From Pristiophorus japonicus (Eukaryota), in the NCBI RefSeq assembly GCF_044704955.1, contig NC_091979.1:317564001-317628000 (forward strand): a stretch of 64,000 nucleotides of DNA, read 5' to 3'. The notes beneath the pieces were generated by a model. It searched no databases, was not told the origin of the DNA, and saw nothing but the letters and a program-made list of their open reading frames with translations. Shown here piece after piece: positions 12,040 to 45,597 of this stretch. Each line of letters opens with the position of its first letter. Position 1 is the stretch's first letter. The position numbers and the translations under genes are program-made.

Positions 12040-12981
12040 CAGGTACAACGTCCAGAATCCAGAATTCCCAAAACCAGAATTGTCCGAAAATTGGACAGTT
12101 TTGAAGCGGCCAAGGTGGCAACGGAGGGCAGTGCCGGGGGGCCACGGCCAGTGAGAATCGGCGGCCAGCGAGGAGCGGGGGATCGGCCGGTGGCGAGGAG
12201 CGGGGGATCGGCCGGCGGTGAGGAGTGAAGGATCGGCCGGTGGCGAGGAGTGAAGGATCGGCCGGCGGTGAGGAGCGGAGGATTGGCCGGTGGTGAGGAG
12301 CGGAGGATTGGCCGGCGGTGAGGAGCGGGGGATTGGCCGGCGGTGAGGAGCGGAGGATCGGCCGGTGGCGAGGAGCGGGGGATTGGCCGGCGGTGAGGAG
12401 CGGAGGATCGGCCGGTGGTGAGGAGCGGAGGATCGGCCGGCGGTGAGGAGCGGAGGATTGGCCGGCGGTGAGGAGCGGAGGATCGGCCGGTGGTGAGGAG
12501 CGGAGGATTGGCCGGTGGTGAGGAGCGGAGGATTGGCCGGCGGTGAGGAGCGGGGGATTGGCCGGCAGTGCGGAGCGGAGGATTGGCCGGCGGTGAGGAG
12601 CGGGGGATTGGCCGGCAGTGCGGAGCGGAGGATTGGCCGGCGGTGAGGAGTGGAGGATTGGCCGGCGGTGAGGAGCGGAGGATTGGCCGGCGGTGAGGAG
12701 CGGGGGATTGGCCGGCGGTGAGGAGCGGAGGATTGGCCGATGGCGAGGAGCGGAGGATTGGCCGGCGGTGAGGAGCGGAGGATCGGCCGGTGGTGAGGAG
12801 CGGAGGATCGGCCGGCGGTGAGGAGCGGAGGATTGGCCGGCGGTGAGGAGTGGAGGATTGGCCGGCGGTGAGGAGCGGAGGATTGGCCGGCGGTGAGGAG
12901 CGGAGGATTGGCCGATGGCGAGGAGCGGAGGATTGGCCGGCGGTGAGGAGCGCCAACAGCGGAGTTCAGACGTTGTACCTG
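12040..12981. mobile_element. Non-autonomous DNA transposon (Tc1/mariner-Tigger-like MITE) with 13-bp terminal inverted repeats
   Basis: CAGGTACAACGTC (12040-12052) is the exact reverse complement of GACGTTGTACCTG (12969-12981). TA follows the right end; the left flank reads TC (possible mutated TA). Confidence 0.65.
12162..12952. repeat. 25-bp GC-rich minisatellite (GAGGAGCGGAGGATTGGCCGGCGGT)n, about 31 copies
   Basis: Repeat read directly; 25-aa periodicity in the overlapping ORFs. Confidence 0.95.
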
Positions 12982-16478: not shown

Positions 16479-17890
16479 GCTAGTTGGATCCAAAATTGGT
16501 TCAGAGGTAAGAAGCAAAGGGTAATGGTTGATGGATGTTTTTGTGACTGGAAGGATGTTTCCAGTGGAGTCCGCAGGGCTCAGTACTGGGTCCCTTGCTT
16601 TTTGTGGTATACATCAATGATCTAGATTTGATTATAGGGAGTATGATTAAGAAGTTTGCAGATGACACTAAAATTGGCTGTGTGGTCGTTAATGAAGCAG
16701 AAAGTCATGGGCTGCAGGAGGATATCAATCTACTGGTCAGGTGAGCAGAGCAGTGGCAAATGGAATTTAATTTGGAGAAGTGTGAGGTAATGCACTTTGA
16801 GAGGGCTAATAAGGAAAGGATATACACATTAAGCGGTAGACCATGGAAAAGATGAATAAAGGGATCTTGGAGTGCTTGTCCACAGATCCCTGAAAGTAAG
16901 GTGGATAAGGTGGTGAAGAAGGCATACGGAATGGTTGCCTTTCTTGGCTGAGGCACATAATACAAGAGCAGGGAGGTTATGCTTAAAATGTATAATACTT
17001 TGGTTCGGCCACAGCTGGAGTACTGCGTGCAGTTCTGGTCGCCGTATTATAGGAAGGACGTGATTGCAATAGAGAGGGTGCAGAGGAGATTTGCTAGGAT
17101 GCTGCCTGGAATGGAGAAACTTAGCTATGCGGATAGATTGGATAGGCTGGGTTTGTTCTCATTGGAACAGAGGAGGTTGAGAGGAGACCTCATTGAGGTG
17201 TACAAACTTTTGAGGGGCCTGGATATAGTGGATAGCAAGGGCCTATTTCCCTTGGTGGTGGGTTCAATTATGAGGGGGCATAGTTTTAAGGTGGTTGGTG
17301 GAAGGTTCAGAGGGGATTTGAGGGGTGGCTTTTTCAAGCAGAGGGTTGTGGGGGTCTGGAACTTAGTGCCTGGAAGGGTGGTGGATGTAGAAACCCTCAA
17401 CGCATTTAAAAGGTGCTTGGATGTGCACTTAAAGTGCCGCAATCTGCAGGGTTACACGGACCTAAAGCTGGTAAGTGGGATTAGACTGGATAACCTGTTG
17501 GCAGGCACAGCTATGATGGTAAGTACTGCAGGGAATCGAATATATCCAGGGTGATCTCCTGGACGAGTTTCGATTACTTGGATGGGTTGGAGAGGAATGT
17601 TCCGAGATATTTTTTTCCCAATTGACCTGGGTTTTTCTCTGTTTTTTGCCTTTCCCAGGAGATCACATGGCTCCGGTTGGGGAGGAGTGTAGAATGTTTT
17701 GGTGCAAGGGGTGTCGCATTTGTGTGGGGCTGACTGGTTGGGCTGGGTGCTCTTTACCTTTCTGCCATTGTTCATTGATCATACGTTTATATGTAACTTT
17801 CAGGGCTGCTGACTGAGGGCCGTATGTTTCTTTGTCGGCCGGTGTGGACACGATGGGCCGAAATGGCCTCCTTCTGCGTTGTAGATTTGC
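16479..17890 (+). mobile_element. CR1 LINE 3' portion, different subfamily from its neighbour
   Basis: WIQNWFRGKKQRVMVDG, KFADDTK, LVRPQLEYCVQFWSP, RRLRGDLIEVYK; 3' end 'gggccgaaatggcctccttctgcgttgtag'. Confidence 0.92.
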
Positions 17891-19189
17891 AATTGTGCAA
17901 AAATAAATGATGGCTTCTGCTCAAATGCCTTTTCAAAATAGTACTTGCATTGATTGATCAACTCAGCTTTCTGTTGAAAAGCAGGATTGCGAGGGGCTTT
18001 GCTGCCTGGATATTTGATCAGTTGAAATATTTTTTTTCTGTAACACTGACCTATTTGGTGGTGTATGAAGGTAGAGTTTGGGGTAATTTTTAATGCTTTC
18101 TTCAACAGCTCCACAGCTTTTTCCACATCTCCTCTTCTGTAAAATTTTGCTGCATAACGAGTTACATATGGAAGATCAGGGGACTTCTGCAATGCTTGTT
18201 CAACTAATTCGTGTTCTTCCACCTTTTGATTGAACTCTTGTAGTTTTAGAGCCAACAGCACCATGGCTACAGAGTCATCTGGATCAAGTCCCCACACGTC
18301 GCAACTGCTTCACTGATTGGCTGCGGTCACCACTCTCTGGGGTACGAGAAAACGTGTCCACACGAAACATAACAGTCGCATAGCCAACGTTCCATTCAGT
18401 GTCATCAGGATCTTCCTCCAGAGTCTTCTCAAAACATTCCTTTGCCTCTTCATAGTATTGACTAGGAGAATTCAACAGTGACCAACCCTTCTCCCCGTAT
18501 ACTTCAGGTCTCAGTGCTGTATACCGAGAGCCATCGGTAAATTGTTTACAGATCATCTCCAGCTTGTCGAGGTAGGACTGGGCCTCTGTCAGTTGGCCCA
18601 TGTGATAATATACCCAGGCATAGTTTCCATAGGTGATGATGCTTCTTCTTTCAAATTCATGTTCCTGATTCTCCCTCAGAATCTTTTCAGCTTCCTTTAA
18701 GTTTTGAATTGCCCCTTTGAATTGCCTTGCAGACAGTTTACAAATGCGAGGTGGTTGTCAGACCTGGCCTGATAATTCACACCAGCCAGTATTAAATCTT
18801 GTAATCTATACTTCATGTCGTCCAAGTCAATGCTGTCTCTCTGTGGGCCCCACGTGAAGTGACATTGAAGCTGGCTGAGTTTTGCTTTCAAGCAATCATT
18901 CAGTGTGTTGCTGTAGGAGAACAAAATAATCAAAGCCCATCTTATGTGTATCTAACTTACATTTTTAGCTCATATATAATCAACATAGCAATGCTGGTAA
19001 AGTCAGAATAGCAGAACAGATGAGCAGCTCAGTGCACATGGGCCCGGAACACTTCCCTACAGCCTCACTGCCTGGCATCCCTCAGTTCGGGGGAAACCCA
19101 TTGGAATCCTGTAATGGTCCCGGAGGCAATAACAAATGAACAATTGGCTCATGAGTGTCAGCAGAAATCCACGATCATCCATTAGTCTG

Positions 19190-19555
19190 ATCATAGGTAG
19201 GAACATAGGAACATGTTCCACCATTCAATTTATCATGGCTGAACTGTATCACAACTTCATCTACCCACCCTGGTTCTGTAACCCTTAATACCCTTGCCTA
19301 ACAAAATTCTATCATCTCAGTTTTGACATTTTTAATTGGCCTAACCTCGACAGCTTATTAGGGGAGAGAGTTCCAGATTTCCACTACCCTTTGTGTGAAG
19401 AAGAGCTGTCTGACATCACCCCTGAATGGCTGAGCTCAAATTTCACTTTCATGCCCCCTTGTTCTGGCCTCCCCCACCAGAGGAAATCGTTTCTCTCGAT
19501 CGACCCGGTCAAATCCTTTAATCATATAAACATCTCAATTAGATCATCCCTTAAC
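19190..19555 (-). mobile_element. CR1 3' fragment
   Basis: Tail-like 'cataggtaggaacataggaacat' and similarity to the 3' ends of the other minus-strand CR1 copies in the window. Confidence 0.6.
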
Positions 19556-19958
19556 ACTGGGGAAAGCGGGCTCGGGGAATGGGAGACTGGGGAATGGGGG
19601 CTCGGGGATAGAGAGACTGGGGAATGTGGGCTCGGGGAGAGGGAGACTGGGGAATGGGGGCTCGGGGAGAGGGTGACTGGGAAATGGGGACTCGGGGAGA
19701 GGGAAACTGGGGAATGGGGGCGCGGGGAGAGGGAGACTGGGGAATGGGGGCTCGGGGAGAGGGAGACTGGGGAATGGGAGCTCGGGGAGAGGGAGACTGG
19801 GGAATGGGGGCTCGGGGAGAGGGAGACTGGGAAATGGGGGCTCGGGGAGAGGGAGACTGGGGAATGGGGGCTCGGGGAGAACGAGACTGGGGAATGGGGG
19901 CTCGGGGAGAGGGAGACTGGGGAATGGGGCCTCGGGGAGATGGAGACTGGGGAATGGG
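19556..19958 (+). repeat. 30-bp G-rich minisatellite (GGGAGACTGGGGAATGGGGGCTCGGGGAGA)n
   Basis: Repeat read directly; 10-aa periodicity (GERETGEWGL). Confidence 0.95.
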
Positions 19959-20321
19959 TCAGGGGGGATCATGGTGAGGCCAGGCGGGAGGTAGAAGAGG
20001 CCAGGTTGAGTGTAATTTATTCTGTGGTGGCCTGGAGGAGCTGGACTGATCCCTGGGCTCCAGACAAGGTCACTGGGCCTCTCCAGCCCTGGCCTTCTCT
20101 CACACACCACAGCAACTCCCTTCAGCCCCCTCCCAGCAGATCCCTTCAGCCCCCTTCCAGCAGATCCCTTCAGTCCCCTCGCAGCAGATCCCTTGAACCC
20201 CTCAGCAGATCGAGCTGCCGGGGGTGGGCAGAGCTTTCGGGGGGTTGGGAGTCGGGAAGTTGGGTTTGGAGGGTGGTGGGAGAACTCGGGACCGGGAGAG
20301 GCGGGGATTATCTTTAACCTA

Positions 20322-20363
20322 CCCGGCAACTGATGATGCAACTCGCAGTATTTGTCTGATTGG
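20322..20363 (+). promoter_or_regulatory. MHC X-Y promoter module (X1/X2 and Y boxes of the SXY enhanceosome)
   Basis: X1-like CCCGGCAACTGATG (20322-20335; compare HLA-DRA CCTAGCAACAGATG), overlapping X2/CRE-like TGATGCAA, then Y box CTGATTGG (20356-20363) 20 nt after X1, the conserved spacing. A second CCAAT box (CCAATCAG) lies at 20487-20494. Orientation matches the downstream MHC-I gene. Confidence 0.75.
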
Positions 20364-20547: not shown

Positions 20548-23500
20548 ATAGCACAGAGAGACAGTCCCAGAGACACAGTATCAGCACAGGGCACCGAGAC
20601 AGTCCCAGAGACACAGTATCAGCACAGGGCACAGAGAGACAGTCCCAGAGACACAGTATCAGCACAGGGCACAGAGAGACAGTCCCAGAGACACAGTATC
20701 AGCACAGGGCACAGAGAGACAGTCCCAGAGACACAGTATCAGCACAGGGCACAGAGAGACAGTCCCAGAGACACAGTATCAGCACAGGGCACAGAGAGAC
20801 AGTCCCAGAGACACAGTATCAGCACAGGGCACAGAGAGACAGTCCCAGAGACACAGTATCAGCACAGGGCACAGAGAGACAGTCCCAGAGACACAGTATC
20901 AGCACAGGGCACCGAGAGACAGTCCCGGAGACACAGTATCAGCACAGGGCACAGAGAGACAGTCCCAGAGACACAGTATCAGCACAGGGCACAGAGAGAC
21001 AGTCCCAGAGACACAGTATCAGCACAGGGCACCGAGAGACAGTCCCAGAGACACAGTATCAGCACAGGGCACAGAGAGACAGTCCCAGAGACACAGTATC
21101 AGCATAGGGCACAGCGAGCCAGTCCAGAGACACAGTATCAGCACAGGGCACAGAGAGACAGTCCCAGAGACACAGTATCAGCACAGGGCACAGAGACAGT
21201 CCCAGAGACACAGTATCAGCACAGGGCACAGAGAGACAGTCCCAGAGACACAGTATCAGCACAGGGCACAGAGAGACAGTCCCAGAGACACAGTATCAGC
21301 ACAGGGCACAGAGAGACAGTCCCAGAGACACAGTATCAGCACAGGGCACAGAGAGACAGTCCCAGAGACACAGTATCAGCACAGGGCACAGAGAGACAGT
21401 CCCAGAGACACAGTATCAGCACAGGGCACCGAGAGACAGTCCCGGAGACACAGTATCAGCACAGGGCACAGAGAGACAGTCCCAGAGACACAGTATCAGC
21501 ACAGGGCACAGAGAGACAGTCCCAGAGACACAGTATCAGCACAGGGCACCGAGAGACAGTCCCAGAGACACAGTATCAGCACAGGGCACAGAGAGACAGT
21601 CCCAGAGACACAGTATCAGCACAGGGCACAGAGAGACAGTCCCAGAGACACAGTATCAGCACAGGGCACAGAGAGACAGTCCCAGAGACACAGTATCAGC
21701 ACAGGGCACAGAGAGACAGTCCCAGAGACACAGTATCAGCACAGGGCACAGAGAGACAGTCCCAGAGACACAGTATCAGCACAGGGCACAGAGAGACAGT
21801 CCCAGAGACACAGTATCAGCACAGGGCACCGAGAGACAGTCCCGGAGACACAGTATCAGCACAGGGCACAGAGAGACAGTCCCGGAGACACAGTATCAGC
21901 ACAGGGCACAGAGAGACAGTCCCAGAGACACAGTATCAGCACAGGGCACCGAGAGACAGTCCCAGAGACACAGTATCAGCACAGGGCACAGAGAGACAGT
22001 CCCAGAGACACAGTATCAGCATAGGGCACAGCGAGCCAGTCCCAGAGACACAGTATCAGCACAGGGCACAGAGAGACAGTCCCAGAGACACAGTATCAGC
22101 ACAGGGCACAGAGACAGTCCCAGAGACACAGTATCAGCACAGGGCACAGAGAGACAGTCCCAGAGACACAGTATCAGCACAGGGCACAGAGAGACAGTCC
22201 CAGAGACACAGTATCAGCACAGGGCACAGAGAGACAGTCCCAGAGACACAGTATCAGCACAGGGCACAGAGAGACAGTCCCAGAGACACAGTATCAGCAC
22301 AGGGCACAGAGAGACAGTCCCAGAGACACAGTATCAGCACAGGGCACCGAGAGACAGTCCCGGAGACACAGTATCAGCACAGGGCACAGAGAGACAGTCC
22401 CAGAGACACAGTATCAGCACAGGGCACAGAGAGACAGTCCCAGAGACACAGTATCAGCACAGGGCACCGAGAGACAGTCCCAGAGACACAGTATCAGCAC
22501 AGGGCACAGAGAGACAGTCCCAGAGACACAGTATCAGCACAGGGCACAGAGAGACAGTCCCAGAGACACAGTATCAGCACAGGGCACAGAGAGACAGTCC
22601 CAGAGACACAGTATCAGCACAGGGCACAGAGAGACAGTCCCAGAGACACAGTATCAGCACAGGGCACAGAGAGACAGTCCCAGAGACACAGTATCAGCAC
22701 AGGGCACCGAGAGACAGTCCCGGAGACACAGTATCAGCACAGGGCACAGAGAGACAGTCCCAGAGACACAGTATCAGCACAGGGCACCGAGAGACAGTCC
22801 CGGAGACACAGTATCAGCACAGGGCACAGAGAGACAGTCCCAGAGAGAGAGTATCAGCACAGGGCACAGAGACAGTCTCAGAGACACAATATCAGCACAG
22901 GGCACAGAGAGACAGTCCCAGAGACACAGTATCAGCACAGGGCACAGAGAGACAGTCCCAGAGACACAGTATCAGCACAGAGCACAGAGAGACAGTCCCA
23001 GAGACACAGTATCAGCACAGGGCACAGAGAGACATTCCCAGAGACACAGTATCAGCACAGGGCACAGAGACAGTCCCAGGGACATAGTATCAGCACAGGG
23101 CACAGAGAGACAGTCCCAGAGACATAGTATCAGCACAGGGCACAGAGAGACAGTCCCGGAGACACAGTATCAGCACAGGCACAGAGAGTCAGTCCCAGAG
23201 ACACAGTATCAGCATAGGGCACAGTGAGACAGTCCCGGAGACACAGTATCAGCATAGGGCACAGAGAGACAGTCCCAGAGACACAGTATCAGCACAGGGC
23301 ACAGAGAGACAGTCCCGGAGACACAGTACCAGCACAGGGCACAGAGACAGTCCCAGAGACACAGTATCGACACAGGGCACAGAGAGACAATCCCAGAGAC
23401 ACAGTATCAGCACAGGGCATAGAGACAGTCCCAGAGACACAGTATCAGCACAGGGCACAGAGAGACAGTCCCAGAGACAGAGTATCAGCACAGGGCACAG

Positions 23501-26064
23501 AGACAGTCCCAGAGACACAATATCAGCACAGGGCACAGAGAGACAGTCCCAGAGACACAGTATCAGCACAGGGCACAGAGAGACAGTCCCAGAGACACAG
23601 TATCAGCACAGGGCACCGAGAGACAGTCCCAGAGACACAGTATCAGCACAGGGCACAGAGAGACAGTCCCAGAGACACAGTATCAGCACAGGGCACAGAG
23701 AGACAGTCCCAGAGACACAGTATCAGCACAGGGCACAGAGAGACAGTCCCAGAGACACAGTATCAGCACAGGGCACAGAGAGACAGTCCCAGAGACACAG
23801 TATCAGCACAGGGCACAGAGAGACAGTCCCAGAGACACAGTATCAGCACAGGGCACCGAGAGACAGTCCCGGAGACACAGTATCAGCACAGGGCACAGAG
23901 AGACAGTCCCAGAGACACAGTATCAGCACAGGGCACCGAGAGACAGTCCCGGAGACACAGTATCAGCACAGGGCACAGAGAGACAGTCCCAGAGAGAGAG
24001 TATCAGCACAGGGCACAGAGACAGTCTCAGAGACACAATATCAGCACAGGGCACAGAGAGACAGTCCCAGAGACACAGTATCAGCACAGGGCACAGAGAG
24101 ACAGTCCCAGAGACACAGTATCAGCACAGAGCACAGAGAGACAGTCCCAGAGACACAGTATCAGCACAGGGCACAGAGAGACATTCCCAGAGACACAGTA
24201 TCAGCACAGGGCACAGAGACAGTCCCAGGGACATAGTATCAGCACAGGGCACAGAGAGACAGTCCCAGAGACATAGTATCAGCACAGGGCACAGAGAGAC
24301 AGTCCCGGAGACACAGTATCAGCACAGGCACAGAGAGTCAGTCCCAGAGACACAGTATCAGCATAGGGCACAGTGAGACAGTCCCGGAGACACAGTATCA
24401 GCATAGGGCACAGAGAGACAGTCCCAGAGACACAGTATCAGCACAGGGCACAGAGAGACAGTCCCGGAGACACAGTACCAGCACAGGGCACAGAGACAGT
24501 CCCAGAGACACAGTATCGACACAGGGCACAGAGAGACAATCCCAGAGACACAGTATCAGCACAGGGCATAGAGACAGTCCCAGAGACACAGTATCAGCAC
24601 AGGGCACAGAGAGACAGTCCCAGAGACAGAGTATCAGCACAGGGCACAGAGACAGTCCCAGAGACACAATATCAGCACAGGGCACAGAGACAGTCCCAGA
24701 GACACAGTATCAGCACAGGGCACAGAGACAGTCCCAGAGACACAGTATCAGCACAGGGCACAGAGACAGTCCCAGGGACATAGTATCAGCACAGGGCACA
24801 GAGAGACAGTCCCGGAGACACAGTATCAGCACAGGGCACAGAGAGACAGTCCCAGAGACACAGTATCAGCACAGGGCACAGAGAGACAGTCCCAGAGACA
24901 CAGTATCAGCACAGGGCACAGAGAGACAGTCCCAGAGACACAGTATCAGCACAGGGCACAGAGACAGTCCCAGGGACATAGTATCAGCACAGGGCACAGA
25001 GAGACAGTCCCGGAGACACAGTATCAGCACAGGCACAGAGAGTCAGTCCCAGAGACACAGTATCAGCATAGGGCACAGAGAGACAGTCCCGGAGACACAG
25101 TATCAGCATAGGGCACAGAGAGACAGTCCCAGAGACACAGTATCAGCACAGGGCACAGAGAGACAATCCGGAGACACAGTATCAGCACAGGCACAGAGAT
25201 TCAGTCCCAGAGACACAGTATCAGCACTGGGCACAGAGAGACAGTCCCAGAGACACAGTATCAGCACAGGGCACAGAGACAGTCCCAGAGACACAGTATC
25301 AGCACAGGGCACAGAGAGACAGTCCCAGAGACACAGTATCAGCACAGGGCACAGAGAGACAGTCCCAGAGACACTGTATCAGCACAGGGCACAGAGACAG
25401 TCCCAGAGACACAATATCAGCACAGGGCACAGAGAGACAATCCCAGAGACACAGTATCAGCACAGGGCACAGAGAGACAGTCTCAGAGACACAGTATCAG
25501 CACAGTGCACAGAGAGACAGTCCCAGAGACACAATATCAGCACAGGGCACAGAGAGACAGTCCCAGAGACACAGTATCAGCACAGGGCACAGAGACAGTC
25601 CCAGGGACATAGTATCAGCACAGGGCACAGAGAGACAGTCCCGGAGACACAGTATCAGCACAGGCACAGAGATTCAGTCCCAGAGACACAGTATCAGCAT
25701 AGGGCACAGAGAGACAGTCCCGGAGACACAGTACCAGCACAGGGCACAGAGACAGTCCCAGAGACACAGTATCGACACAGGGCACAGAGAGACAGTCCCA
25801 GAGACACAGTATCAGCACAGGGCATAGAGACAGTCCCAGGGACACAGTATCAGCACAGGGCACAGAGAGACAGTCCCAGGGACACAGTATCAGCACAGGG
25901 CACAGAGAGACAGTCCCAGAGACACAGTATCAGCACTGGGCACAGAGAGACAGTCCCAGAGACACAGTATCAGCACAGGGCACAGAGAGACAGTCCCAGA
26001 GACACAGTATCAGCACAGGGCACAGAGAGACAGTCCCAGAGACACAGTATCGGCACTGGGCACA
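20548..26064. repeat. 40-bp minisatellite (CAGTCCCAGAGACACAGTATCAGCACAGGGCACAGAGAGA)n, about 138 copies
   Basis: Repeat read directly, with 38- and 39-bp variant units; 40-aa periodicity in overlapping ORFs. Confidence 0.98.
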
Positions 26065-26161
26065 GGAATCACACGGTCTGAATTGGGCGCAGCTCACGGA
26101 CGGTCTCTCGGAAAAGGATTGCCTGCAAACTGCTCATCCCAGCCTGTCGAGGGAAGTAACA

Positions 26162-27209
26162 ATGTTTGGACTGACCGTGCTGGCCCTTCTGTGTGGAGAG
26201 GTGTGTGCAGGCTCTCACTCCCTGCGGTACATGCACACGGCTATCACTCCGCTCCCGGGCATTGCTGAGTTCACCGATGTGGGTTATGTGGATGACCAGC
26301 AGTTTATTTACTATGACAGTGTGAGCCGCCAGTACACCCCGCGGCAGCGGTGGATCAGGGAGAGCGAGGGCGCCGAGTACTGGGAGCGCTACACACAGAT
26401 CCTGCGGGGCAAGGAGCAGGTGATGAAAGGCAACATTCAGACCGTCTTAACCCGCACCAACCAGACCGCCGGGATCCACACGCTGCAGAGGTTGTGCGGC
26501 TGTGAGCTGCGGGATGACGGCACCACCAGCGGCTTCTGGCAGTACGGCTGGGACGGGAAGGACCTGATCAGCTTCGACAAGGATCGCCTGGTGTGGGTCA
26601 CCCCGGTACCGTGGGGAGAGATCACCAAGAACAAGTGGGACCAGGACAGGGCCGAAATGCAGCAGGACAAAAGTTACCTGGAGCAGGAGTGCATCGAGTG
26701 GCTGAAGAAATACCTGAAGGCTGGAGAGAGAGAACTGGGAGCTGTTGCTCCTCAAGTGTTTCCTTCTGTGGACAAGGCGTCAAATATTAAAGCCCCCCAA
26801 CTCTCCTGTCTCCTCACAGGTTTTTACCCTCGCGAAATCCAAGTGACCCTCCTGAGAAATGGCGAGCCAATCAGGGACACGGAATCCACGGGCATCCTGC
26901 CCAATCACGACATGGGCTCAGATCGAGCCCGCGGATGGAGCCACCTATTCCTGTCAGTATGAGCAGAGCGGCCAAGCAGGAGGGAAGACCCGAGACTGGG
27001 ACGGGACGTACCGAGTGACTCCAGGATCGCCAGAGGGAATAAATAGGGGTTTGATTGTTGGAATTGTGATTGCTGCCGTCGCCCTGATTGCTCTTGTGAT
27101 CGGTGCGGTTGTGTGGAAGAGGAGAGGAGGAGAGGAGACATCTGGTTACAGCCCAGCGAACCCTGCTGAACGAGGAGAATTATCCCCAAACTCAGTAGCC
27201 CAGTCCTGA
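26162..27209 (+). pseudogene. Single-exon (intronless) MHC class I heavy-chain gene with a frameshifting deletion in alpha3
   Basis: Signal peptide MFGLTVLALLCGEVCA; alpha1 GSHSLRY...VGYVDDQQFIYYDS...EYWER...RTNQT; alpha2 HTLQRLCGCEL...GKDLISFD...ITKNKWD...YLEQECIEWLKKYL; alpha3 LSCLLTGFYPREIQVTLLRNG...ILPNHD. The frame shifts at about 26910 to TWAQIEP..YSCQYEQ, TM GLIVGIVIAAVALIALVIGAVVW and tail KRR..SGYSPA..*(27209). No intron at any domain boundary. Confidence 0.93.
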
Positions 27210-27454
27210 GGCTGATCCCGAAGTGAAGTTCACTGGGACTAGAATCTGGACTTGCTGTGTCGCAAGGAGGGTTCATTCAGAAGCAATCCACGATTCTGCA
27301 TCTTCATTTCGTTTGATTGTCACTGGCTGCTGCCAGTGTTAATAGTAATCGGTAATGTATCTATCATTGAGTGGGTTTGGGGATATTTTCTTTTTGGTGA
27401 TTGGATAGAAATCTCCAGTTGGGTCTTTTGGTGTTTAATGTAAATGAGATGTGT

Positions 27455-27521
27455 CGATTTCGGCACGGGCTGGATGGCCAAATGGTCGTCTTCCGTGCTG
27501 TAACCATTCTATGATTCTATG
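27455..27521 (+). mobile_element. Short CR1-type 3' end with (ATTCTATG)n tail
   Basis: 'ggcacgggctggatggccaaatggtcgtcttccgtgctgtaaccattctatgattctatg' resembles the CR1 terminal stem-loop plus octamer tail. Confidence 0.6.
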
Positions 27522-27531
27522 TATGGTGGCC

Positions 27532-28131
27532 GGGGGAGAGGGAGACTGGGAATGGGGTGGGGGGAGAGAGGGAGACTGGGAATGGGGTCTTGGGGAGACG
27601 GAGACTGGGAATGGGGGCTGGGGGAGAGAGGGAGACTGGGAATGGGGTCTTGGGGAGAGAGAGACTGGGGAATGGGGGCTCAGGGAGAGGGAGACTGGGG
27701 AATGGGGGCTAGGGGAGAGAGGGACTGGGTAATGGGGGCTCAGGGAGAGGGAGACTTGGGAATGGGGCCTCGGGGAGAGAGAGACTGGGGAATGGGGGCT
27801 TGGGGAGCGGGAGACTGGGGAATGGGGGCTTGGGGAGACGGAGACTTGGGAATGGGGCCTCGGGGAGAGAGAGACTGGGGAATGGGGGCTCGGGGCTCGG
27901 GAGACTGGGGAATGGGGGCTTGGGGAGAGGGAGACTGGGGAATGGGGGCTTGGGGAGAGAGGGAGACTGGGGAATGGGGGCTCTGGGAGAGGGAGACTGG
28001 GGAATGGGGGCTTGGGGAGAGAGGGAGACTGGGGAATGGGGGCTCTGGGAGAGGGAGACTGGGGAATGGGGGCTCGGGGAGAGAGAGACTGGGGAATGGG
28101 TGCTCGGGGAGAGGGAGACTGGGGAATGGGG
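27532..28131 (+). repeat. 30-bp G-rich minisatellite, second block
   Basis: Same unit as 19556-19958. Its right flank (28132-28464) is the reverse complement of 45196-45597 and 52136-52551. Confidence 0.95.
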
Positions 28132-33519: not shown

Positions 33520-35633
33520 GACAGAGGGGAATAAAATGGAGACAGAAGCAAAAGATAGAAAGGAGAATGGTAAAAGTGGAGGACAGAGAAACCCAAGGCA
33601 AAAAACAAAAAGGGCCACTTTACAACAGAATTCAAAAGGGTCAAAGTATGTTAAAAGACAAGCCACAATGTGAGGAGTATTCAGAATAAGGTGGACGAAT
33701 TAACTGCACAGATAGCTGTTAATGTATACGATGTGATTGGCATCATGGAGACACGGTTCCAGGATGATCAAGGCTGGGAACTCAACATCCAAAGGTATTC
33801 AGCATTTAGGAAGGATAGACGGAAAGGAAAAGGAGGTGGGCTGGCGTTGCTGGTTAAAGAGGAAATTAATGCAATTGTAAGGAAGGACATTAGCTTGAAT
33901 TATGTGGAATCGGTATGGGTGGAGCTACGGAATACCAAAGGACAGAAAACACAAGTAGGAGTTGTGTACATGCCACCAAACAGTAGCAGTGAGGTTGGGG
34001 ACAGCATCAAACAAGAAATAAGGGATGTGTGCAATAAAGGTACAGCAGTTATCATGGGCGACTTTAATCTACATATTGATTGGCCTAACCTAACTGGTAG
34101 CAATGCAGTGGAGGAGGATTTCCTGGAGTGTATTGGGGATGGTTTTCGAGACCAATATGTTGAGGAACCAACCAGAGAGCTGGCTATCCTCGACTGGATG
34201 ATGTGTAATGAGAAGGGACTAATTAGAAATCTTGTTGTGCGAGGCCCCTTGGGGAAGAGTGACCATAATATGGTAGAATTCAGTATTAAGATGGAGAGTG
34301 ACAAAGTTAATTCAGAAACTAGGGTGCTGAACATAAGAAAAGAATTGGCTAGATTAGACTGGCAAATGATACTTAAAGGGTTGACGGTGGATAGGCAATG
34401 GCAAAACACAAAGATCATATGGACGAACTTCAACAATTGTATATCCCTGTCTGGAGTAAAAATAAAACAGGGAAGGTGGCTCAACCGTGGCTAACAAGGG
34501 AAATTAAGGATAGTGTTAAATTCAATGAAGAGGCATACAAATTAGCTAGAAAAAGTAGCAAGCCAGAGGACTGGGAGAAATTTAGAATAAAGCAGAGGAG
34601 GACAAAGGGTTTAATTAAGAGGGGGGAAATAGAGTACGAGAGGAAGCTTGCCGGAAACATAAAAACTGACTGTAAAAGCTTCTATAGATATATGAAGAGA
34701 AAAAGATTAGTGAAGACAAACGTAGGTCCCTTGCAGTCGGATTCAGGTGAATTTATAATGGGGAACAAGAAATGGCAGACCAATTGAACAAGTACTTTGG
34801 TTCTGTCTTCGCAAAGGAAGACAAAAATAACCTTCCGGATGTACTAGGGGACCGAAGGTCGAGTGAGAAGGAGGAACTGGAGGATATCCTTATTAGGCGG
34901 GAAATTGTATTCGGGAAATTGATGGGATTGAAGGCCGATAAATCCCCAGGGCCTGATAGTCTGCATCCCAGAGTACTTAATGAAATGGCCCTAGAAATAG
35001 TGGATGCATTGGTGATAATTTTCCAACAGTCTATCGATGCTGGATCAGTTCCTATGGACTGGAGGGTTGCTAATGTAACACCACTTTTTAAAAAAGGAGG
35101 GAGAGAGAAAATGGGTAATTATAGACTGGTTAGCCTGACATCAGTAGTGGGGAAAATGTTGGAATCAATCATTAAGGATGAAATAGCAGTGTATTTGGAA
35201 AGCAGTGATAGGATCGGTCCAAATCAGCATGGATTTATGAAAGGGAAATCATGCTTGACAAATCTTCTGGAATTTATTGAAGATGTAACCAATAGAGTGG
35301 ACAGGGGAGAATCAGTGGATGTGATGTATTTGGACTTTCAAAAGGCTTTTGACAAGGTCCCACACAAGAGATTGGTGTGCAAAATCAAAGCACATGGCAT
35401 TGGGGGTAATGTACTGACGTGGATAGAGAACTGGTTGGCAGACAGGAGGCAGAGAGTCGGGATTAACAGGTCCTTTTCAGAATGGCAGGCAGTGACTAGT
35501 GGAGTGCTGCAGGGCTCAGTGCTGGGACCCCAGCTATTTACAACATATATTAATGATTTAGATGATGGAATTGAATGTAACATCTCCAAGTTTGCAGATG
35601 ACACTAAACTGGGTGGAGGTGTGAGCTGTGAGG
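33520..35633 (+). mobile_element. CR1 LINE ORF2 (APE endonuclease and RT), frameshifted and 3'-truncated
   Basis: RSIQNKVDEL, GGGLALLVK, IMGDFN, SDHNMVEF; KSPGPDSLHPRVL, NYRLVSLTS, YLDFQKAFDKVPH, QGSVLGP, KFADDTK. Confidence 0.95.
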
Positions 35634-38050
35634 AACATAAGAACATAAGAACTTAAGAATTAGGAACAGGAGTAGGCCATCTAGCCCCTCGAGCCTGCTC
35701 TGCCATTCAACAAGATCATAGCTGATCTGGCCGTGGACTCAGCTCCACTTACCTGCCCGCTCCCCTTAACCTTTAATTACCTTATTGGTTAAAAATCTAT
35801 CTATCTGTGATTTGAATACATTCAATGAGCTAGTCTCAACTGCTTCCTTGGGCAGAGAATTCCACAGATTCACAACCCTCTGGGAGAAGAAATTCCTTCT
35901 CAACTTGGTTTTAAATTGGCTCCCCCGTATTTTGAGGCTGTGCCCCCTAGTTCTAGTCTCCCCGACCAGTGGAAACAACCTCTCTGCCTCTATCTTTTCT
36001 ATCCCTTTCATTATTTTAAATGTTTCTTTAAGATCACCCCTCATCCTTCTGAACTCAGAGTAAAGACCCAGTTTACTCAATCTATCATCATAAGGTAACC
36101 CTCTCATCTCTGGAATCAGCCAAGTGAAACGTCTCTGTACCATCTCCAAAGCTAGTATATCCTTCCTTAAGTAAGGTGACCAAAATTGCACGCAATACTC
36201 CAGGTGCGGACTCACTAATACCCTATACAGTTGCAGCAGGACCTCCCTGCTTTTGTACTCCATCCCTCTCGCAATGAAGGCCAACATTCCATTCGCCTTC
36301 ATGATTACCTGCTGCACCTGCAAACTAACTTTTTGGGATTCATGCACAAGGAGCCAACGTCCGCCACGCGGCCGATGCCATCGAGTCGCTAAAAACAGCT
36401 CTGGGCCCTGACTCCGTTAGGTGCATCGAGGAGGCTCAAGCACGTGGGGAGATCCCGTCCGAACTGACCCCCGTCCGGACGGAATTCCTCATCGGCGCCA
36501 AACCCCGGAACCTCCCTCGGGGGCCGGCGCCTCACAACTTGAGCCGCCTCCGGGAAATCCCCTCCGTGCCTTTCAGTTCCGCGCGGAGGGGTTTCCTGTA
36601 CGGGCTGCTCCTGCACACCCTCAACTTTGCCATCCTCGCCGGCCGTCCGGACACGCCATGGCGCACCATCTTGCCGTCCGGAGGAGGCGGGGGTCCCCGA
36701 TGGAGGGCACTCTACGCAGGGGTCCTCCCACTATTCATCGGGGACTTGGCCTGGAGGGTGGTGCACGGAGCAGTGCCGTGCAATAAATTTTTAAGCCGGT
36801 TCACGGACTCCCAGGCCGCTTGCAATTTCTGCGGTCTGGAGGAGTCCGTGTTCCATGTTTTTATTGAATGCACGAGGTTGCAGCCCCTGTTCCACTATTT
36901 GAAGGGGCTGCTCCTGAAATTCTGGCTGCACTTCAGTCCCACTCTCCTGATCTTTGGGCACCCTGTGCGGAGGGGAGCGGGTAGGTCCGAAGGCCTCCTC
37001 GTAGGACTGCTCCTGGGCACGGCCAAGGGTGCCATCAGCCGGTCCAGGCAGCGGGCGGTCGAGGGGGTCGTTCAACCTGACTGCCTGCCTCTCTTCCGCT
37101 CTTACATCCGGTCCAGGGTGTCCTTGGAGATGGAGCACGCGGTGTCCACCGGTACGCTCGCGGCCTTCCGCGAGAGGTGGGCACCGGAGGGACTGGAGTG
37201 CATCATCACGCCCGGCAACCAAATTTTAATTTGATTTTACGTTTTAAAGTTTAATTTGTTTTAATTGCCGGTGCTTTTAGTGTCCCCCTTCCCTTTTATA
37301 GGGGGCACTGGGGAAAAATTGTGATTTTAGTGCCCAAAAAAAAAACAAAAGAAAAAAGAAAAAACACAAAAAAAAAACAAAAAAGGGGGGAAAAAAAGGG
37401 CCTTGTAAATGTCTGGAGTGTCACCCAGGTCGGGTGGCACCGTTTAATGTCTTTATGTTTTGCAGGTAAACTCAAAAGAGTTTCATGCACAAGGACCCCC
37501 AGGTCCCTCTGCACCGCAGCATGTTGCAATTTCTCCCCATTTAAATAAGATTCCCTTTTACTGTTTTTTTTTCCAAGGTGGATGACCTCACATTTTCCGA
37601 CATTGTATTCCATCTGCCAAACCTTAGCCCATTCGCTTAACCTATCTAAAGCTCTTTGCAGCCTCTCTGTGTCCTCTACACAACCCGCTTTCCCACTAAT
37701 CGTTGTGTCATCTGCAAATTTTGTTACACTACACTCTGTCCCCTCTTCCAGGTCAACTATGTATATTGTTAACAGTTGTGGTCCCAGCACCGATCCCTGT
37801 GGCACACTACTAACCACTGATTTCCAACCCGAAAAGGACTCATTTATCACGACTCTCTGCTTTCTGTTAGCCAGCCAATTCTCGATCCATGCTAATACAT
37901 TTCCTCTGACTCCGCGTACCTTTATCTTCTGCAGTAACCTTTTGTGTGGCACCTTATCGAATGCCTTTTGGAAATCTAAATACACCACATCCATCGGTAC
38001 ACCTCTATCCACCATGCTCGTTATATCTTCAAAGAATTCCAGTAAATTAG
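35634..38050 (-). mobile_element. CR1 LINE 3' half, interrupted by a Tx1 element
   Basis: YLDFQKAFDKVPH...QRDLGVLVHE (37296-38015 ORF) continues as HESQKVSLQV...HLEYCVQFWSP (35766-36347 ORF); (CATAAGAA)n tail at about 35634. Confidence 0.93.
36353..37481 (+). mobile_element. 5'-truncated Tx1-clade (L1 group) non-LTR retrotransposon with 14-bp target-site duplication
   Basis: ORF2 C-terminal zinc knuckle 'DLAWRVVHGAVPCN...CNFCGLEESVFHVFIECTRL', open to its stop at 37234; A-rich 3' UTR; TTCATGCACAAGGA duplicated at 36339-36352 and 37482-37495. Confidence 0.88.
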
Positions 38051-38826
38051 CTACAAGAGTTCAATCAAAAGGTGGAAGAACACAAATTAGTTGAACAAGC
38101 ATTGCAGAAGTCCCCTGATCTTCCATATGTAACTCGTTACGCAGCAAAATTTTACAGAAGAGAAGATGTGGAAAAAGCTGTGGAGCTGTTGAAGAAAGCA
38201 TTAGAAATTAGCCCAAACTCTACCTTCATACACCACCAAATAGGTCTGTGTCACAGAAAAAAACTACGTCAACTGATCAAATATCCAGGCAGCAAAGACC
38301 CTCGCAATCCTGCTTTTCAACAGAAAGCTGAGTTGATCAAACTATGCAAGTACTAGTTTGAAAAGGCATTTGAGCCCCGCCCATTAACATCTATTGCAGC
38401 ACAACTGGATTTTGCAAGAATCTGTATACTTGATGAAGAATATCCTGAAGCAGTGAAGATCACAGCAATCTAATGAAATTAGAATATATTCATCCAGAAA
38501 ATAAGCAGAAAATATGTTTACTGGCTGGGTTATTTCAACTGAACCAGAAAAGATAAAACCAGATGCCATCAGCCATTTTCTGGAAGGTGTCAAAGTTAAA
38601 TATGACTCAATACTACGGAAAAAAGTGTTGCAAACATTTGAAGAAGATAGCAGAATGACGACTTTGCATAAATTCAAAAGACAGCAAGGCCTTTGGTGTT
38701 CTTGGGTTACTGCACCAGCTGGATGGGGAGAAGTGTGAAGCTATTGAGTGCTTTGAAAAGGCCTTGGAGTTTGATTGTGACAATGAAGAATATCTAAGTG
38801 TTCTCTCTGAATTACGCCTTTCTATA
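38051..38826 (+). pseudogene. IFIT: IFIT-family exon 2, 3' half only (5' part replaced by CR1)
   Basis: LQEFNQKVEEHKLVEQALQKSPDLPYVTRYAAKFYRR...HHQIGLCHRKK, nearly identical to the 17.9-18.3 kb copy; premature TAG at 38354-38356; further frameshifts; ends EEYLSVLSELRLSI, like the IFIT5 C-terminus. Confidence 0.9.
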
Positions 38827-42300: not shown

Positions 42301-43962
42301 AAACGATACGATATTACAAACACTGAGCAATGCTGGTTCCTGTCCAGAGGGGACGACTGTTTTACATTTCTCTCGAGTTCAAATGAATTAAAATCAGGAG
42401 AGATGTTTAACAGGCCGTCGACTCACTACTACCCAGTTTACGCAGTCGCTCAAAGTCAAGCTCACTCCAGAGTCTGGGGTCAGGGAGCTAAAATGGCCCA
42501 GCCCTCACACTGAGGAGTCCGTGGAGATTTCCCTCTCTACTCACAACCCAGGCCCCAAGTTAAAATCAGGGCAATTAAAGCCTGTTATAAAGTGGAAACG
42601 AGTATTCTGTAAGTGACTTGATCCTCTTTTCAGACTTTGAAGAAGGGTCTATTCTGTGACAAATGGTAATGTAGCAGGGACTTCCTAATGACAGTCGAAA
42701 GCAATCTCAATTGTCATTTATTTCCATGGCAACAGAAAATAAACACGACTTTAAATTCCTGCCTAAGGTCCCATGGAATCTGACTGCACTTACTGTCGAT
42801 TCACAAATAAAACCAACCTCCAGATGGAAAGAGATCAGATGTCGTTAGTTTGACTTTCCAGGTCCAGTTTCTGAGTTATCAATTCTGGTTGGAGGCATTG
42901 CTGGAGATTTGATCATGTGACATTTGATCACATGTCACCTGACCGTGTGATGCCTGACCATATGGCATCTGACCACATGACATCTGATCATGTGACGCAT
43001 GATCACGACATCTGATCATGTGACACCTGATCACATGACTTGTACAAAGGCGATTGGGAAGGAAATTGTGGTCAGGCATCCTTTGGACGAACGCCTCGGA
43101 CCCGGAAAAATTTTCGGAAAATAGCTGGTAGTCATGGAGGAGCCTACGATTGCGGTCGGAGGCTTTCATTCGCTGCACAGCGTACGGGGAGATGACTTCC
43201 CCGTACGTACGGAAACGCTGGAGTCACATGGGCCTGGACCGCCAATCACTGGGTAGTATTCTCATTGATAAAAATGGGAACTCGGTTTTTACAAGTTCCC
43301 ATTACTATCGATGAGGAATCCCTCCTAAAACAAGAAACACAGCATAATAAATTAAAAACAACTCACATATTTAAAATTAATTGAAATTAAATGTAACTAA
43401 GTGTTTTAGAAAAAATATATATTTTTTGAATTTTTTTAATGTATTTGAATAGAGTTAAAAAAATTAACTTATCTTAATGGAGAGGGATTTTACATAAAAT
43501 TGAATAACTAAATAAAAATGTTATATGTTTCGAAAGTGTTACGCTGGTAAAAGTAAGCTATGCGCCTGCTTTTACCAGGAGTAAAAGTTTGAAGGACATT
43601 CGCTGGGCATGAGTTGGGCAAATAGCCCAATCTCTGCCACACAAAATTTCCTTATCCCGGGATGTGCTCGTTGACGGATCGGAAAAGCCGGTTTTCAGCG
43701 CATGTGCATCTTGCCACGAAAACCGACTTTTGTGATCCCTCGCCAGGTCTGTGCGCACATCGTACGGACCCGGCAAGGCTGCAATTTTCAGCCCAATTGC
43801 GTTTACCTTATAACCGTTACGTTCCCTGGAGTTGAGTATTTTTACTTGTGGTTACATGCCAGCAGCTGGTGGGCGATAACTTCCAAGAACCAGGAGACCA
43901 CCCGTGAGCAGACGGATAAGGGAATCCGAGGGTGGAAAAAGGGGGAATCTGAGGACCGGGAA

Positions 43963-44582
43963 TAGGGGAAACCGAGGGCGGGGTACCGGGGAAACCGAGG
44001 GCAGGGTACAGGGGAAACCGAGGGTGGGGTACCGGGGAAACCGAGGGTGGGGTACAGGGGAAACCGAGGGCGGGGAATGGAAGAACCGAGGGTGGGGTAC
44101 AGGGGAAACCGAGGGTGGGGTACCGGGGAAACCGAGGGTGGGGTACAGGGGAGACCGAGGGTGGGGCACAGGGGAAACCGAGGGTGGGGTACAGGGGAAA
44201 CCGAGGGCGGGGTACAGGGGAAACCGAGGGCGGGGCACAGGGGAAACCGAGGGCGGGGCACAGGGGAAACCGAGGTTGGGGTACAGGGGAAACCGAGGGT
44301 GGGGTACAGGAGAAACCGCAGGCGGGGTACAGGGGAAACCGAGGGCGGGGTACAGGGGAAACCGAGGGTGGGGTACAGGGGAAACCGAGGGGGGGGGGTA
44401 CAGGGGAAACCGAGGGGGGGGTACAGGGGAAACCGAGGGTGGGGTACAGGGGAAACCGAGGGGGGGGTACAGGGGAAACCGAGGGCGGGGTACAGGGGAA
44501 ACCGAGGGTGGGGTACAGGGGAAACCGAGGGGGGGGTACAGGGGAAACCGAGGGGGGGGTACAGGGGAAACCGAGGGTGGGT
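43963..44582 (+). repeat. 23-bp G-rich minisatellite (GGGGTACAGGGGAAACCGAGGGT)n
   Basis: Repeat read directly; 23-aa periodicity. Confidence 0.95.
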
Positions 44583-45597
44583 GAGCAATTTGCAGAGGGG
44601 AAACCAGAAGTCAAAGGAATTTTTTTCCACCAGTAAAGAATGGTAACTCACTGAAATTGTACTGATGACTAACAGTAATACTGGTATCACTCAGATTCCC
44701 CTCACAATCAACAGTAATACAATAACTGATTGATAGTCTATATGTTACAAGCAGTAATAGGTGTAATGTCTCTCTATCCTACATGTAACTAGCAGTAATA
44801 CTTTAACCCACTGATACTCACCCTGAAACCATACCCAGAATCCCCCTGCACTGCACCAGGTGAGGTCAGGCTCCTCAGTTGAAGCCACATTTAACAGGCC
44901 CAGTCGCTCTCTCTCTCTCTATCTCCTTGGAATCTGGTTTGGTCTCCGGTTCCGTGTGAAGATGACAATTCTGAACTGGGAACCTCAGTCTGAGCTGATC
45001 TGTACTTGGACTTCACACGTCAAACCCGGCCGACACAGACCCACCTGAACCAAACCGAGAGATTGCACAAAGGCCAGTGAGCTCAGTGTTTGGGGCACTT
45101 CTCACAGGGCACATTGTCCTAAACTCAGCTCAGCACCAACATTTCTAAACCGCTCCATGTGCTCGGTCTCAATAAAGGAGGGTTTGCATAGAATTATAGA
45201 AATGACTGCACAGGAGGAGACCATTCGGTCTCGGAGCTCGCACTCTCTTCTGTAATCCCATTCCCCCCCCAGATCTTTTTATATTCTTCCTTTTCAAATA
45301 TTTATCCCATTCCCTTTAGGTTTTAGATGCTACCTCAATAGCTACATGTAGTGAAGGATCCCACGGTCCAATAGCCCTTCCTCCTCCCTGCCCCCTTGTT
45401 TCTTCCAGTGAGAATCCTTGGTTTCTGTTCCCTAGTTCCCCATTCGCCCACCACTGGAAATAATCTTTCACTATTTACCCACAGTAAGGTCCCCAGGTTT
45501 CACTCACCCCTTTACTGGCTGCTCCTCTCTGTGTCACTCCCACTCACCACGTTGCTGCTGCTCCCGGCTCTGTGGGAAATACTGGAACCCACACCCA

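What the first reader, a model, noticed from the sequence alone, without database searches (positions are those of the whole stretch)
26162..27209. Completely intronless MHC class I gene with a near-classical peptide groove, inside an IFIT cluster
Seen: leader, alpha1, alpha2, alpha3, TM and cytoplasmic tail are contiguous. By alignment to HLA numbering, Y7, Y59, R84, T143, K146, W147, Y159 and Y171 are all kept, as are the N86 glycan site (NQT), C101/C164 and a cytoplasmic GYSPA tyrosine motif. Only position 123 (L) and an extra Cys at 99 deviate. Established: class I genes normally use one exon per domain, and IFIT clusters are not part of the MHC in mammals. From memory, single-exon nonclassical class I lineages have been reported in elasmobranchs, but this needs verifying. 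Inference: this is a retro-derived class I lineage member that still looks peptide-binding and lies in an interferon-response locus.
Basis: partly seen in the sequence, partly recalled or inferred. Interest (0 to 1): 0.85.

Follow-up and report, generated by a model that had tools for sequence, protein, structure and literature searches.

The report
Broken intronless shark MHC class I copy
This is a dead copy, broken by one 20-letter deletion, of an unusual Japanese sawshark gene family: MHC class I antigen-presenting genes with no introns in the coding part that sit among interferon-induced IFIT genes, so it shows how that family is born and dies but is not itself a working gene.

Summary
The stretch is a real MHC class I heavy-chain sequence with leader, alpha1, alpha2, alpha3, TM and tail contiguous, and the eight peptide-terminus residues are kept. 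It is not intact. A 20-nt deletion at 26911/26912, flanked by a (T)CACGA direct repeat, removes GTYQLTT of alpha3 and shifts the frame, so the ORF ends at 26962 after 266 aa.

Six intact proteins annotated in Pristiophorus japonicus are 98-99% identical to it. Contigs of a DNA run and of probable RNA runs carry only the undeleted form.

The copy sits in a cassette: an MHC-type X1/X2/Y promoter box, a 5.5-kb 40-bp VNTR, the single coding exon, and a 3'UTR. The 3'UTR ends in a CR1-type hairpin plus (ATTCTATG)x2. The cassette splits a G-rich satellite next to an IFIT pseudogene.

In the tree the family is classical-type (UAA-like). It is nearest the sawshark's own 355-aa class I protein (71% identity) and Squalus, and lies outside the UBA-like group.

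Best reading: a young pseudogene member of a CR1-retroposed, segmentally duplicated family.

The scan had already found intact copies of this family on other DNA of the same genome. I found no published shark precedent; teleost L-lineage genes are the nearest.

The parts
17800..18911 (-). IFIT pseudogene, large exon: broken frames, cut short by a LINE near 17880, no ISRE promoter left
   Evidence: PDB IFIT5 7e-31 and IFIT1 5e-30; ORFs split at 18297/18601; acceptor ...ctacag|caac near 18911 read; no ISRE core nearby
19114..19184 (+). Upstream exon used in the gene model of paralog P0124 (MVPEA.TNEQLAHECQQKSTIIH), lying antisense in a LINE fragment outside the cassette; GT follows at 19185
   Evidence: tblastn 96% over 23 aa; sequence read
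19556..19958 (.). Left half of the 30-bp G-rich satellite that the cassette splits
   Evidence: TRF 13.4 copies, 92% matches; same unit and orientation as 27523-28131
19959..20325 (+). Unique 5' part of the cassette, nature unknown
   Evidence: No other match in the window
20326..20363 (+). MHC-type X1/X2/Y promoter box: GCAACTGATG, 20 nt, CTGATTGG
   Evidence: 1 match in the window, 0.00 expected from 100 shuffles; a further CCAAT at about 20488
20551..26065 (.). 40-bp VNTR, 139 copies, between the promoter box and the coding exon
   Evidence: TRF score 9889, 94% matches
26066..26161 (+). 5' leader; 26093-26161 matches the N-terminal extension of P0001; splice acceptor cccag|cctg at 26141/26142
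   Evidence: tblastn 100% over 24 aa; P0124 junction ...IIHY|LSREVT
26162..26911 (+). Coding piece A: leader, alpha1, alpha2 and the first 53 residues of alpha3, ending PNHD
26905..26912 (+). Site of the 20-nt deletion (placement ambiguous within the direct repeat TCACGA); the frame shifts here
   Evidence: DNA contig X1 and contig X5 have 20 nt put in behind 26904; intact paralogs read PNHDGTYQLTTWAQ
26913..27209 (+). Coding piece B: rest of alpha3 (WAQIEP...YSCQYEQS), connecting peptide, TM, tail with SGYSPA, and stop. Open, but out of frame with the ATG
27210..27460 (+). Low-copy 3'UTR without a canonical AATAAA
   Evidence: Read; X5 contig 26959-27518 runs through it
27461..27521 (+). CR1-type 3' end: hairpin 27461-27500, then (ATTCTATG)x2 at 27506-27521; the cassette ends here
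   Evidence: Fold -25.8 kcal/mol, z -3.95; depth 366,000 in DNA run X1 against about 200 for the gene, with loose ends on both sides; motif positions; CR1 rule in PMC8665684
27523..28131 (.). Right half of the split satellite; with the flank to 28320 it recurs, reversed and uninterrupted, at 45411-46230 and 52363-53272

Best explanation
Window 26162-27209 is a young pseudogene copy of a sawshark-specific multi-copy family of classical-type (UAA-derived) MHC class I genes. In this family the whole protein is encoded on one exon.

Shown:
- The copy is 98-99% identical to six intact annotated paralogs.
- It carries one disabling lesion, a 20-nt deletion between (T)CACGA direct repeats. This is the signature of replication slippage or microhomology repair. 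It removes seven alpha3 codons and shifts the frame, so translation stops after 266 aa without the second alpha3 cysteine, the TM or the tail.

Inferred:
- The family founder was made when a class I transcript ending in a CR1 3' end (hairpin plus ATTCTATG repeats) was reverse-transcribed by CR1 machinery into a G-rich satellite upstream of an IFIT gene.
- The IFIT-MHC unit was then multiplied by segmental duplication, because sequence outside the cassette (the upstream exon of paralog P0124) is shared.
- This unit is decaying as a whole. The IFIT partner is a promoterless pseudogene, and a 5.5-kb VNTR separates the MHC-type promoter box from the exon.
- This copy makes no working heavy chain.
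For: Identity and breakage: (4-8 amino-acid differences from each paralog over 348 comparable residues).

Deletion and its direct repeat: where a 20-nt insertion behind 26904 is present in a DNA contig and in an RNA-like contig. Both pieces are otherwise free of stops.

Family clade 100/100; sister to sawshark P0002 at 88/81, then Squalus at 92/88; UBA-like clade separate. Eight groove residues kept.

CR1 end.

Split satellite with uninterrupted copies elsewhere in the window.

Shared flank with a paralog: (19114-19182).

Promoter box.

IFIT pseudogene.
Against: - No read or contig showed the window's own deleted form or any of its roughly ten private letters. Logan contigs drop rare variants among many near-identical copies, so the deletion is not confirmed independently of the assembly.
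- A plain retrocopy should not carry the parental promoter, yet an X1/X2/Y box lies upstream.
- No clear target-site duplication was found; there is only a loose ATGGTG.GGCC similarity at both junctions.
A single founding insertion and the parent's introns are therefore inferred, not shown.
Confidence: 0.8

Rival explanations
1. The gene is intact in the animal and the 20-nt deletion is an assembly or consensus error in a collapsed multi-copy region.
For: Every contig laid over the site, in the DNA run X1 and in X5, has the 20 nt. The window's private letters were seen in no contig.
Against: Contigs of runs with many 98-99% identical copies keep the majority path and drop single-copy variants. 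The copy has about ten further private substitutions spread over 1.4 kb, as expected of a separate locus and not of a local error. The deletion lies exactly between direct repeats, as real slippage deletions do.
Confidence: 0.1
2. It is a one-off processed pseudogene made directly from the mRNA of an intron-bearing gene, unrelated in origin to the other intronless copies.
For: No introns; a CR1-type 3' end at the boundary; inserted in a satellite.
Against: It carries a promoter box and 5' leader upstream of the ATG that match annotated paralogs beyond the coding part (P0001 extension, 24 of 24 residues). Even the exon of P0124, 7 kb upstream and outside the cassette, is present. That points to DNA-level duplication of a unit of 8 kb or more. 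The nearest non-family protein is only 71% identical.
Confidence: 0.05
3. The family lost its introns in place, by conversion of an ordinary class I gene with its own cDNA, and reached the IFIT cluster by DNA-level movement. On this reading the CR1 end is a later, unrelated insertion.
For: The MHC-type X1/X2/Y box upstream is easier to explain if the promoter was never lost. Teleost L-lineage genes show partial and complete intron loss (PMC4810163).
Against: The cassette boundary coincides to the base with the CR1 terminus and is followed at once by the resumed satellite. There is no poly(A) signal before it.
Confidence: 0.15

Closest known systems
Shark classical-type MHC class I (UAA), e.g. 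nurse shark Gici-UAA (PDB 6LUP), Triakis UAA, Squalus Q8HWH7
   Same: Same domain order. All eight peptide-terminus residues, the N86 glycan site, the disulfide cysteines and the GY.PA tail motif are shared. The copy groups with squalomorph classical-type sequences in the tree.
   Different: No coding introns. Multi-copy and nearly invariant between copies. It lies among IFIT genes, not beside TAP/PSMB genes (that linkage was not tested here). Apparent expression is about a thousandfold lower than that of the P0002-type gene in two RNA-like runs. This copy is frameshifted.
Teleost L-lineage MHC class I 'processed genes' (Dijkstra et al. 2007; reviewed in PMC4810163)
   Same: Class I genes that have lost all domain-separating introns, exist in several copies, and are expressed at low levels.
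   Different: L-lineage molecules lack the peptide-binding residues and belong to a separate, bony-fish lineage. The sawshark family keeps all eight residues and derives from shark UAA-type genes.
Shark nonclassical UBA lineage (multicopy, derived from UAA; PMC12562908, PMC10751288)
   Same: An expanded shark class I family derived from UAA.
   Different: UBA-like sequences (Hefr O19480, sawshark P0032) have lost Y59, T143 and K146 and form a separate clade. Published UBA clusters map inside the MHC.
LINE-mediated processed pseudogenes / CR1-dependent retrocopies
   Same: Intron-free copy of a transcript ending in the LINE's own 3' recognition structure, a hairpin plus 8-nt microsatellite.
   Different: It carries an upstream MHC-type promoter box and has been further copied at the DNA level together with its flanks.

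Membership tests
MHC class I heavy chain | alpha1-alpha2 peptide-binding superdomain | tested here: met
   Pfam PF00129 E=4.3e-53 over profile 1-179; 6LUP E=3.5e-87
MHC class I heavy chain | Complete C1-set alpha3 domain with both cysteines, followed by TM and tail in frame | tested here: not met
   C1-set matched only over profile 3-55 of 86. A 20-nt deletion removes GTYQLTT and shifts the frame, with a stop at 26962
Classical-type (UAA-like) class I | Eight conserved residues that hold the peptide termini (Y7, Y59, R/Y84, T143, K146, W147, Y159, Y171) | tested here: met
   YYRTKWYY, as in 6LUP and Triakis UAA; residue list from PMC8236899
Classical-type (UAA-like) class I | High polymorphism in groove residues | tested here: inconclusive
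   Six paralog proteins differ at only 0-4 positions from one another and not at typical groove sites. Allelic data are not available
Classical-type (UAA-like) class I | Tight linkage to TAP/PSMB8 in the MHC | not testable with these tools
   The window holds IFIT fragments and transposons only. Scan notes place the W-category MHC cluster on another piece of the genome (unchecked)
Classical-type (UAA-like) class I | High, ubiquitous expression | tested here: inconclusive
   Family contigs at depth 35-50 (X5) and 7 (X7), against about 70,000 and 2,000 for P0002-type pieces. Contig depth is a poor measure, and the tissues are unknown
Processed (retro-derived) gene copy | All domain-separating introns absent | tested here: met
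   Collinear tblastn without gaps other than the 20-nt deletion
Processed (retro-derived) gene copy | 3' end marked by the mobilising LINE's signature (poly(A) for L1; hairpin plus ATTCTRTG repeats for CR1) | tested here: met
   No poly(A). CR1-type hairpin and (ATTCTATG)x2 at the exact cassette end; high-copy in the DNA run
Processed (retro-derived) gene copy | Target-site duplication | tested here: inconclusive
   Only a loose ATGGTG(A)GGCC similarity at 19971 and 27523
Processed (retro-derived) gene copy | Parental promoter not carried along | tested here: not met
   X1/X2/Y box at 20326-20363
Shark UBA nonclassical lineage | Groups with UBA sequences and shares their altered groove residues | tested here: not met
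   Separate clade 100/99; UBA-like rows read YAR I.W
Teleost L lineage | Groups with bony-fish L sequences and lacks peptide-binding residues | tested here: not met
   Nested within shark sequences; residues kept. No L sequence was included in the tree

The most novel reading that the evidence does not exclude
The family to which this dead copy belongs may be a working, peptide-presenting class I system. On this reading it escaped the MHC by CR1-mediated retroposition, was co-amplified with IFIT genes in an interferon-response cluster, and turns over by birth and death. That would be an exception to the published rule that no elasmobranch class I gene lies outside the MHC (PMC10751288). This copy, with one lesion and under 1% divergence, would then be a very recent loss or even a null allele still segregating in the population.
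Probability: 0.3. Interest if true: 0.8.

Novelty: new variant of a known kind. Interest (0 to 1): 0.5.

Why it matters
Published surveys state that in elasmobranchs every class I gene maps to the MHC (PMC10751288). Intron-free class I genes are known only from the non-peptide-binding teleost L lineage (PMC4810163).

A classical-type, intron-free class I family spread through an IFIT cluster would be a new way for antigen-presentation genes to leave the MHC and multiply. It would also be an example of the rare CR1-dependent route to retrogenes.

This particular copy adds the 'death' side of that story:
- It dates a loss to very recently, with a single lesion.
- It shows the whole IFIT-MHC unit decaying together.
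- It preserves the insertion anatomy: split satellite, CR1 end, promoter box and VNTR.

By itself it is a pseudogene and has no function to study.

Tried and rejected
Copy-to-copy flank comparison, the parent's gene structure and dN/dS could therefore not be done.
- Reads: only contigs were available. They show the intact form and none of the window's private letters, so they neither confirm nor refute the deletion. They also give no copy-specific evidence of transcription.
- That X5 and X7 are RNA is my inference from a 1000-fold depth contrast that is absent in DNA run X1. The low-depth family contigs could in principle be DNA carry-over.
- Run X6, labelled as another organism, holds pieces 99.7% identical. 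Its nature is unknown.
- A search for an ISRE by the MHC promoter found none with GAAANNGAAAS. The elements I first took for ISREs at 19440-19500 are coding sequence of a LINE fragment.
- No clear target-site duplication was found.
- The bacterial-type promoter scan is irrelevant to a shark gene.
- Literature: no shark intronless class I or class I retrogene was found. The two Almeida papers on shark Ib lineages are not held, so I could not check whether they mention intron loss.
- Lineage names (UAA, UBA) are assigned from residue patterns, a few named sequences and reviews, not from a curated reference set.
- For alignments and trees I joined the two coding pieces with X at the break inside scripts. 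Search tools were given the pieces apart.
- No structure or complex prediction was run, because sequence identity to solved class I chains makes the fold certain.

Full report
**What is there**

Window 26162-27209 (+) reads as an MHC class I heavy chain. The ORF from the ATG at 26162 matches Pfam MHC_I over the whole profile (E=4.3e-53), plus the first two thirds of a C1-set domain. Its best solved relative is the nurse shark class I chain 6LUP (E=3.5e-87).

Full-length class I proteins align to the DNA collinearly and without intron-sized gaps: residues 1-250 on 26162-26911 and residues 258-355 on 26913-27206.

**It is broken**

- The ORF from the ATG ends at 26962 after 266 aa. The rest of alpha3, the TM and the tail are open only in the next frame (26859-27209).
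- Six intact proteins annotated in Pristiophorus japonicus (355, 380 and 385 aa) read ...PNHDGTYQLTTWAQIEP... where the window reads PNHD, one extra base, then WAQIEP.
- Contigs of a DNA run (X1) and of run X5 carry 20 extra nucleotides behind 26904.
- With those letters restored in the alignment, the missing segment lies between two copies of (T)CACGA. That is the pattern left by replication slippage or microhomology repair.
- Both coding pieces are otherwise free of stops.
- The copy differs from each paralog at only 4-8 of 348 comparable residues.
- About ten private nucleotide differences from the paralog consensus are visible over 1.4 kb.

This is a young pseudogene with a single disabling lesion. 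The truncated product would lack the second alpha3 cysteine, the TM and the tail.

Neither the deleted form nor the private letters appeared in any contig. These are Logan contigs of runs that hold many near-identical copies, and rare paths are dropped. The reads therefore do not confirm the deletion independently. I give an assembly error about one chance in ten.

**The groove residues**

By alignment with the crystallised nurse shark UAA, Triakis UAA, the Squalus cDNA and others, the residues equivalent to Y7, Y59, R84, T143, K146, W147, Y159 and Y171 are all kept (YYRTKWYY). PMC8236899 lists these as the peptide-terminus binders.

The two 'deviations' are ordinary for sharks. Cys99 is shared with nurse shark UAA, and Leu123 with Squalus. 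The HLA numbers themselves come from my recall of HLA-A2.

**Which lineage**

In a maximum-likelihood tree:
- The window copy and the intact paralogs form one clade (100/100) on a long stem (0.24).
- That clade is sister to the sawshark's own 355-aa class I protein P0002 (88/81), then to Squalus Q8HWH7 (92/88).
- All of these lie inside a group of classical-type shark sequences.
- The UBA-like sequences (Hefr O19480, sawshark P0032), which have lost Y59, T143 and K146, form a separate clade.

Identity to P0002 is 65% in alpha1, 73% in alpha2 and 84% in alpha3. The family is therefore an old offshoot of the squalomorph classical-type gene that was amplified or homogenised very recently. No closer relative from another species appeared among 5.8 billion proteins.

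**The surroundings**

The copy sits in a cassette bounded by the two halves of one 30-bp G-rich satellite, at 19556-19958 and 27523-28131. The same satellite with its right flank occurs uninterrupted and reversed at 45411-46230 and 52363-53272. Each of those has an ISRE core about 300 nt beyond it. These look like empty sites upstream of IFIT-type promoters.

Inside the cassette, in order:
- 367 nt of unique sequence.
- An X1/X2/Y box, GCAACTGATG-N20-CTGATTGG, at 20326-20363 (one match, none expected).
- A 40-bp VNTR of 139 copies at 20551-26065.
- A 96-nt leader.
- The coding exon.
- A 313-nt 3'UTR.

The last 61 nt (27461-27521) are a stable hairpin (-25.8 kcal/mol, z -3.95) followed by ATTCTATG twice. 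This is the 3' architecture that CR1 reverse transcriptase is thought to recognise (PMC8665684, citing Suh 2015). In the DNA run this segment has a depth of 366,000, against about 200 for the gene, with unrelated sequence on both sides. It is therefore a genuine high-copy LINE end. The cassette stops exactly at its terminus.

To the left of the satellite lie a LINE fragment and an IFIT pseudogene on the minus strand (17800-18911; IFIT5 E=7e-31). The pseudogene has broken frames and no ISRE promoter left. A second IFIT fragment lies at 38072-38356.

**How the copies spread**

The N-terminal extensions in the annotated paralogs are informative.
- P0001's extension is the in-frame translation of the window's leader (24 of 24 residues).
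- P0124's extension is an exon found at window 19114-19182, outside the cassette, with a GT after it and an acceptor at 26141/26142.

At least one intact paralog therefore shares flanking DNA beyond the cassette. This argues for DNA-level duplication of an IFIT-MHC unit of 8 kb or more, and against repeated independent retroposition.

**Expression**

Runs X5 and X7 are unlabelled. They show class I pieces at depths of 70,000 and 2,000 that are only about 300 deep in the DNA run. The adjoining loose ends spell the P0002 protein. I take both runs to be RNA.

In them, contigs of the intronless family (intact form) reach depths of 35-50 and 7, and one runs from the coding part through the 3'UTR into the CR1 end. 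This suggests low-level transcription of the family. None of it can be assigned to this copy, and DNA carry-over is not excluded.

**Best explanation and rivals**

- Best (0.8): a recently inactivated member of a single-coding-exon, UAA-derived class I family. I put roughly 0.6 on the sub-claim that the founder arose by CR1-mediated retroposition into the satellite upstream of an IFIT gene and then spread by segmental duplication.
- Rival, assembly error (0.1).
- Rival, a one-off processed pseudogene (0.05). The shared leader, promoter and outside exon contradict it.
- Rival, intron loss in place by cDNA conversion followed by DNA movement (0.15). The presence of an MHC-type promoter favours it; the exact coincidence of the cassette end with the CR1 terminus counts against it.

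**Comparison with what is known**

Veríssimo et al. 2023 report that no elasmobranch class I gene lies outside the MHC. The only documented intron-free class I genes I could find are teleost L-lineage genes, which lack peptide-binding residues. Searches for a shark precedent found nothing, but two key shark Ib papers were not available.

Whether the IFIT cluster is unlinked to the sawshark MHC could not be tested. Scan notes place the W-category MHC cluster on another piece of the genome (unchecked).

**Earlier work in this scan**

Other agents have already reported intact copies of this family on other DNA of the same genome, within about 1.7 Mb on either side. Their reports include the CR1 tail and the promoter. 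I re-tested those two points on this copy and they hold.

This window adds the pseudogene state, the microhomology deletion, the split-satellite anatomy with empty sites, and the shared outside exon.

**Verdict**

The locus itself is a dead gene of moderate interest. The family it belongs to is an unusual variant of a known kind.

Noticed in passing
window 20551-26065: A 5.5-kb array of 139 copies of a 40-bp unit lies between the MHC-type promoter box and the coding exon. The unit resembles the sequence just before it (gcactgggca...cacagagagacag), so it probably expanded in place from the 5' leader. Whether intact copies have a shorter array is unknown.
   Followed up: partly
window 19114-19184 (+): The first coding exon of one annotated paralog's gene model (P0124) is present here, antisense in a LINE 3' fragment 7 kb upstream of the ATG. 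It would splice over the satellite, promoter box and VNTR to an acceptor at 26141/26142. It is either an exonised transposon piece or a gene-prediction artefact.
   Followed up: partly
window 26087-26089: Two paralog proteins (P0001, P0121) start 25 codons upstream, at an in-frame ATG-type start whose place in this copy reads GCG CAG. The annotated long forms are probably leader read-through and not real N-termini.
   Followed up: no
run X6 laid on window 26470-26771 and 27041-27188: A small 2021 run labelled as a different organism holds pieces 99.7% identical to this family. This is either a close relative that also carries the family, or a labelling difference.
   Followed up: no
window 683-8479: Three tandem copies of a 3,159-bp unit, each with the same 184-, 119- and 169-aa minus-strand ORFs. 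The ORFs look like transposon remnants; there was no Pfam match at E<0.001.
   Followed up: no
window 43942-44581, 49669-49906, 50950-51527: A second G-rich satellite (23-bp unit GGGGAAACCGAGGGCGGGGTACA) recurs three times near the IFIT-type promoter units.
   Followed up: no
window 54512-58626 (-): An LTR-retrotransposon body with integrase (rve, 1.3e-14), reverse transcriptase (1.7e-22) and gag-like ORFs, inserted just beyond the ISRE promoter at 53525-53541.
   Followed up: no
window 33670-38356: LINE ORFs (endonuclease, reverse transcriptase, zf-RVT) in both orientations abut an IFIT fragment at 38072-38356. This IFIT copy was cut by transposon insertion.
   Followed up: no
window 12170-12952: A 25-bp satellite (31 copies) that produces long artefactual ORFs on the minus strand.
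   Followed up: no
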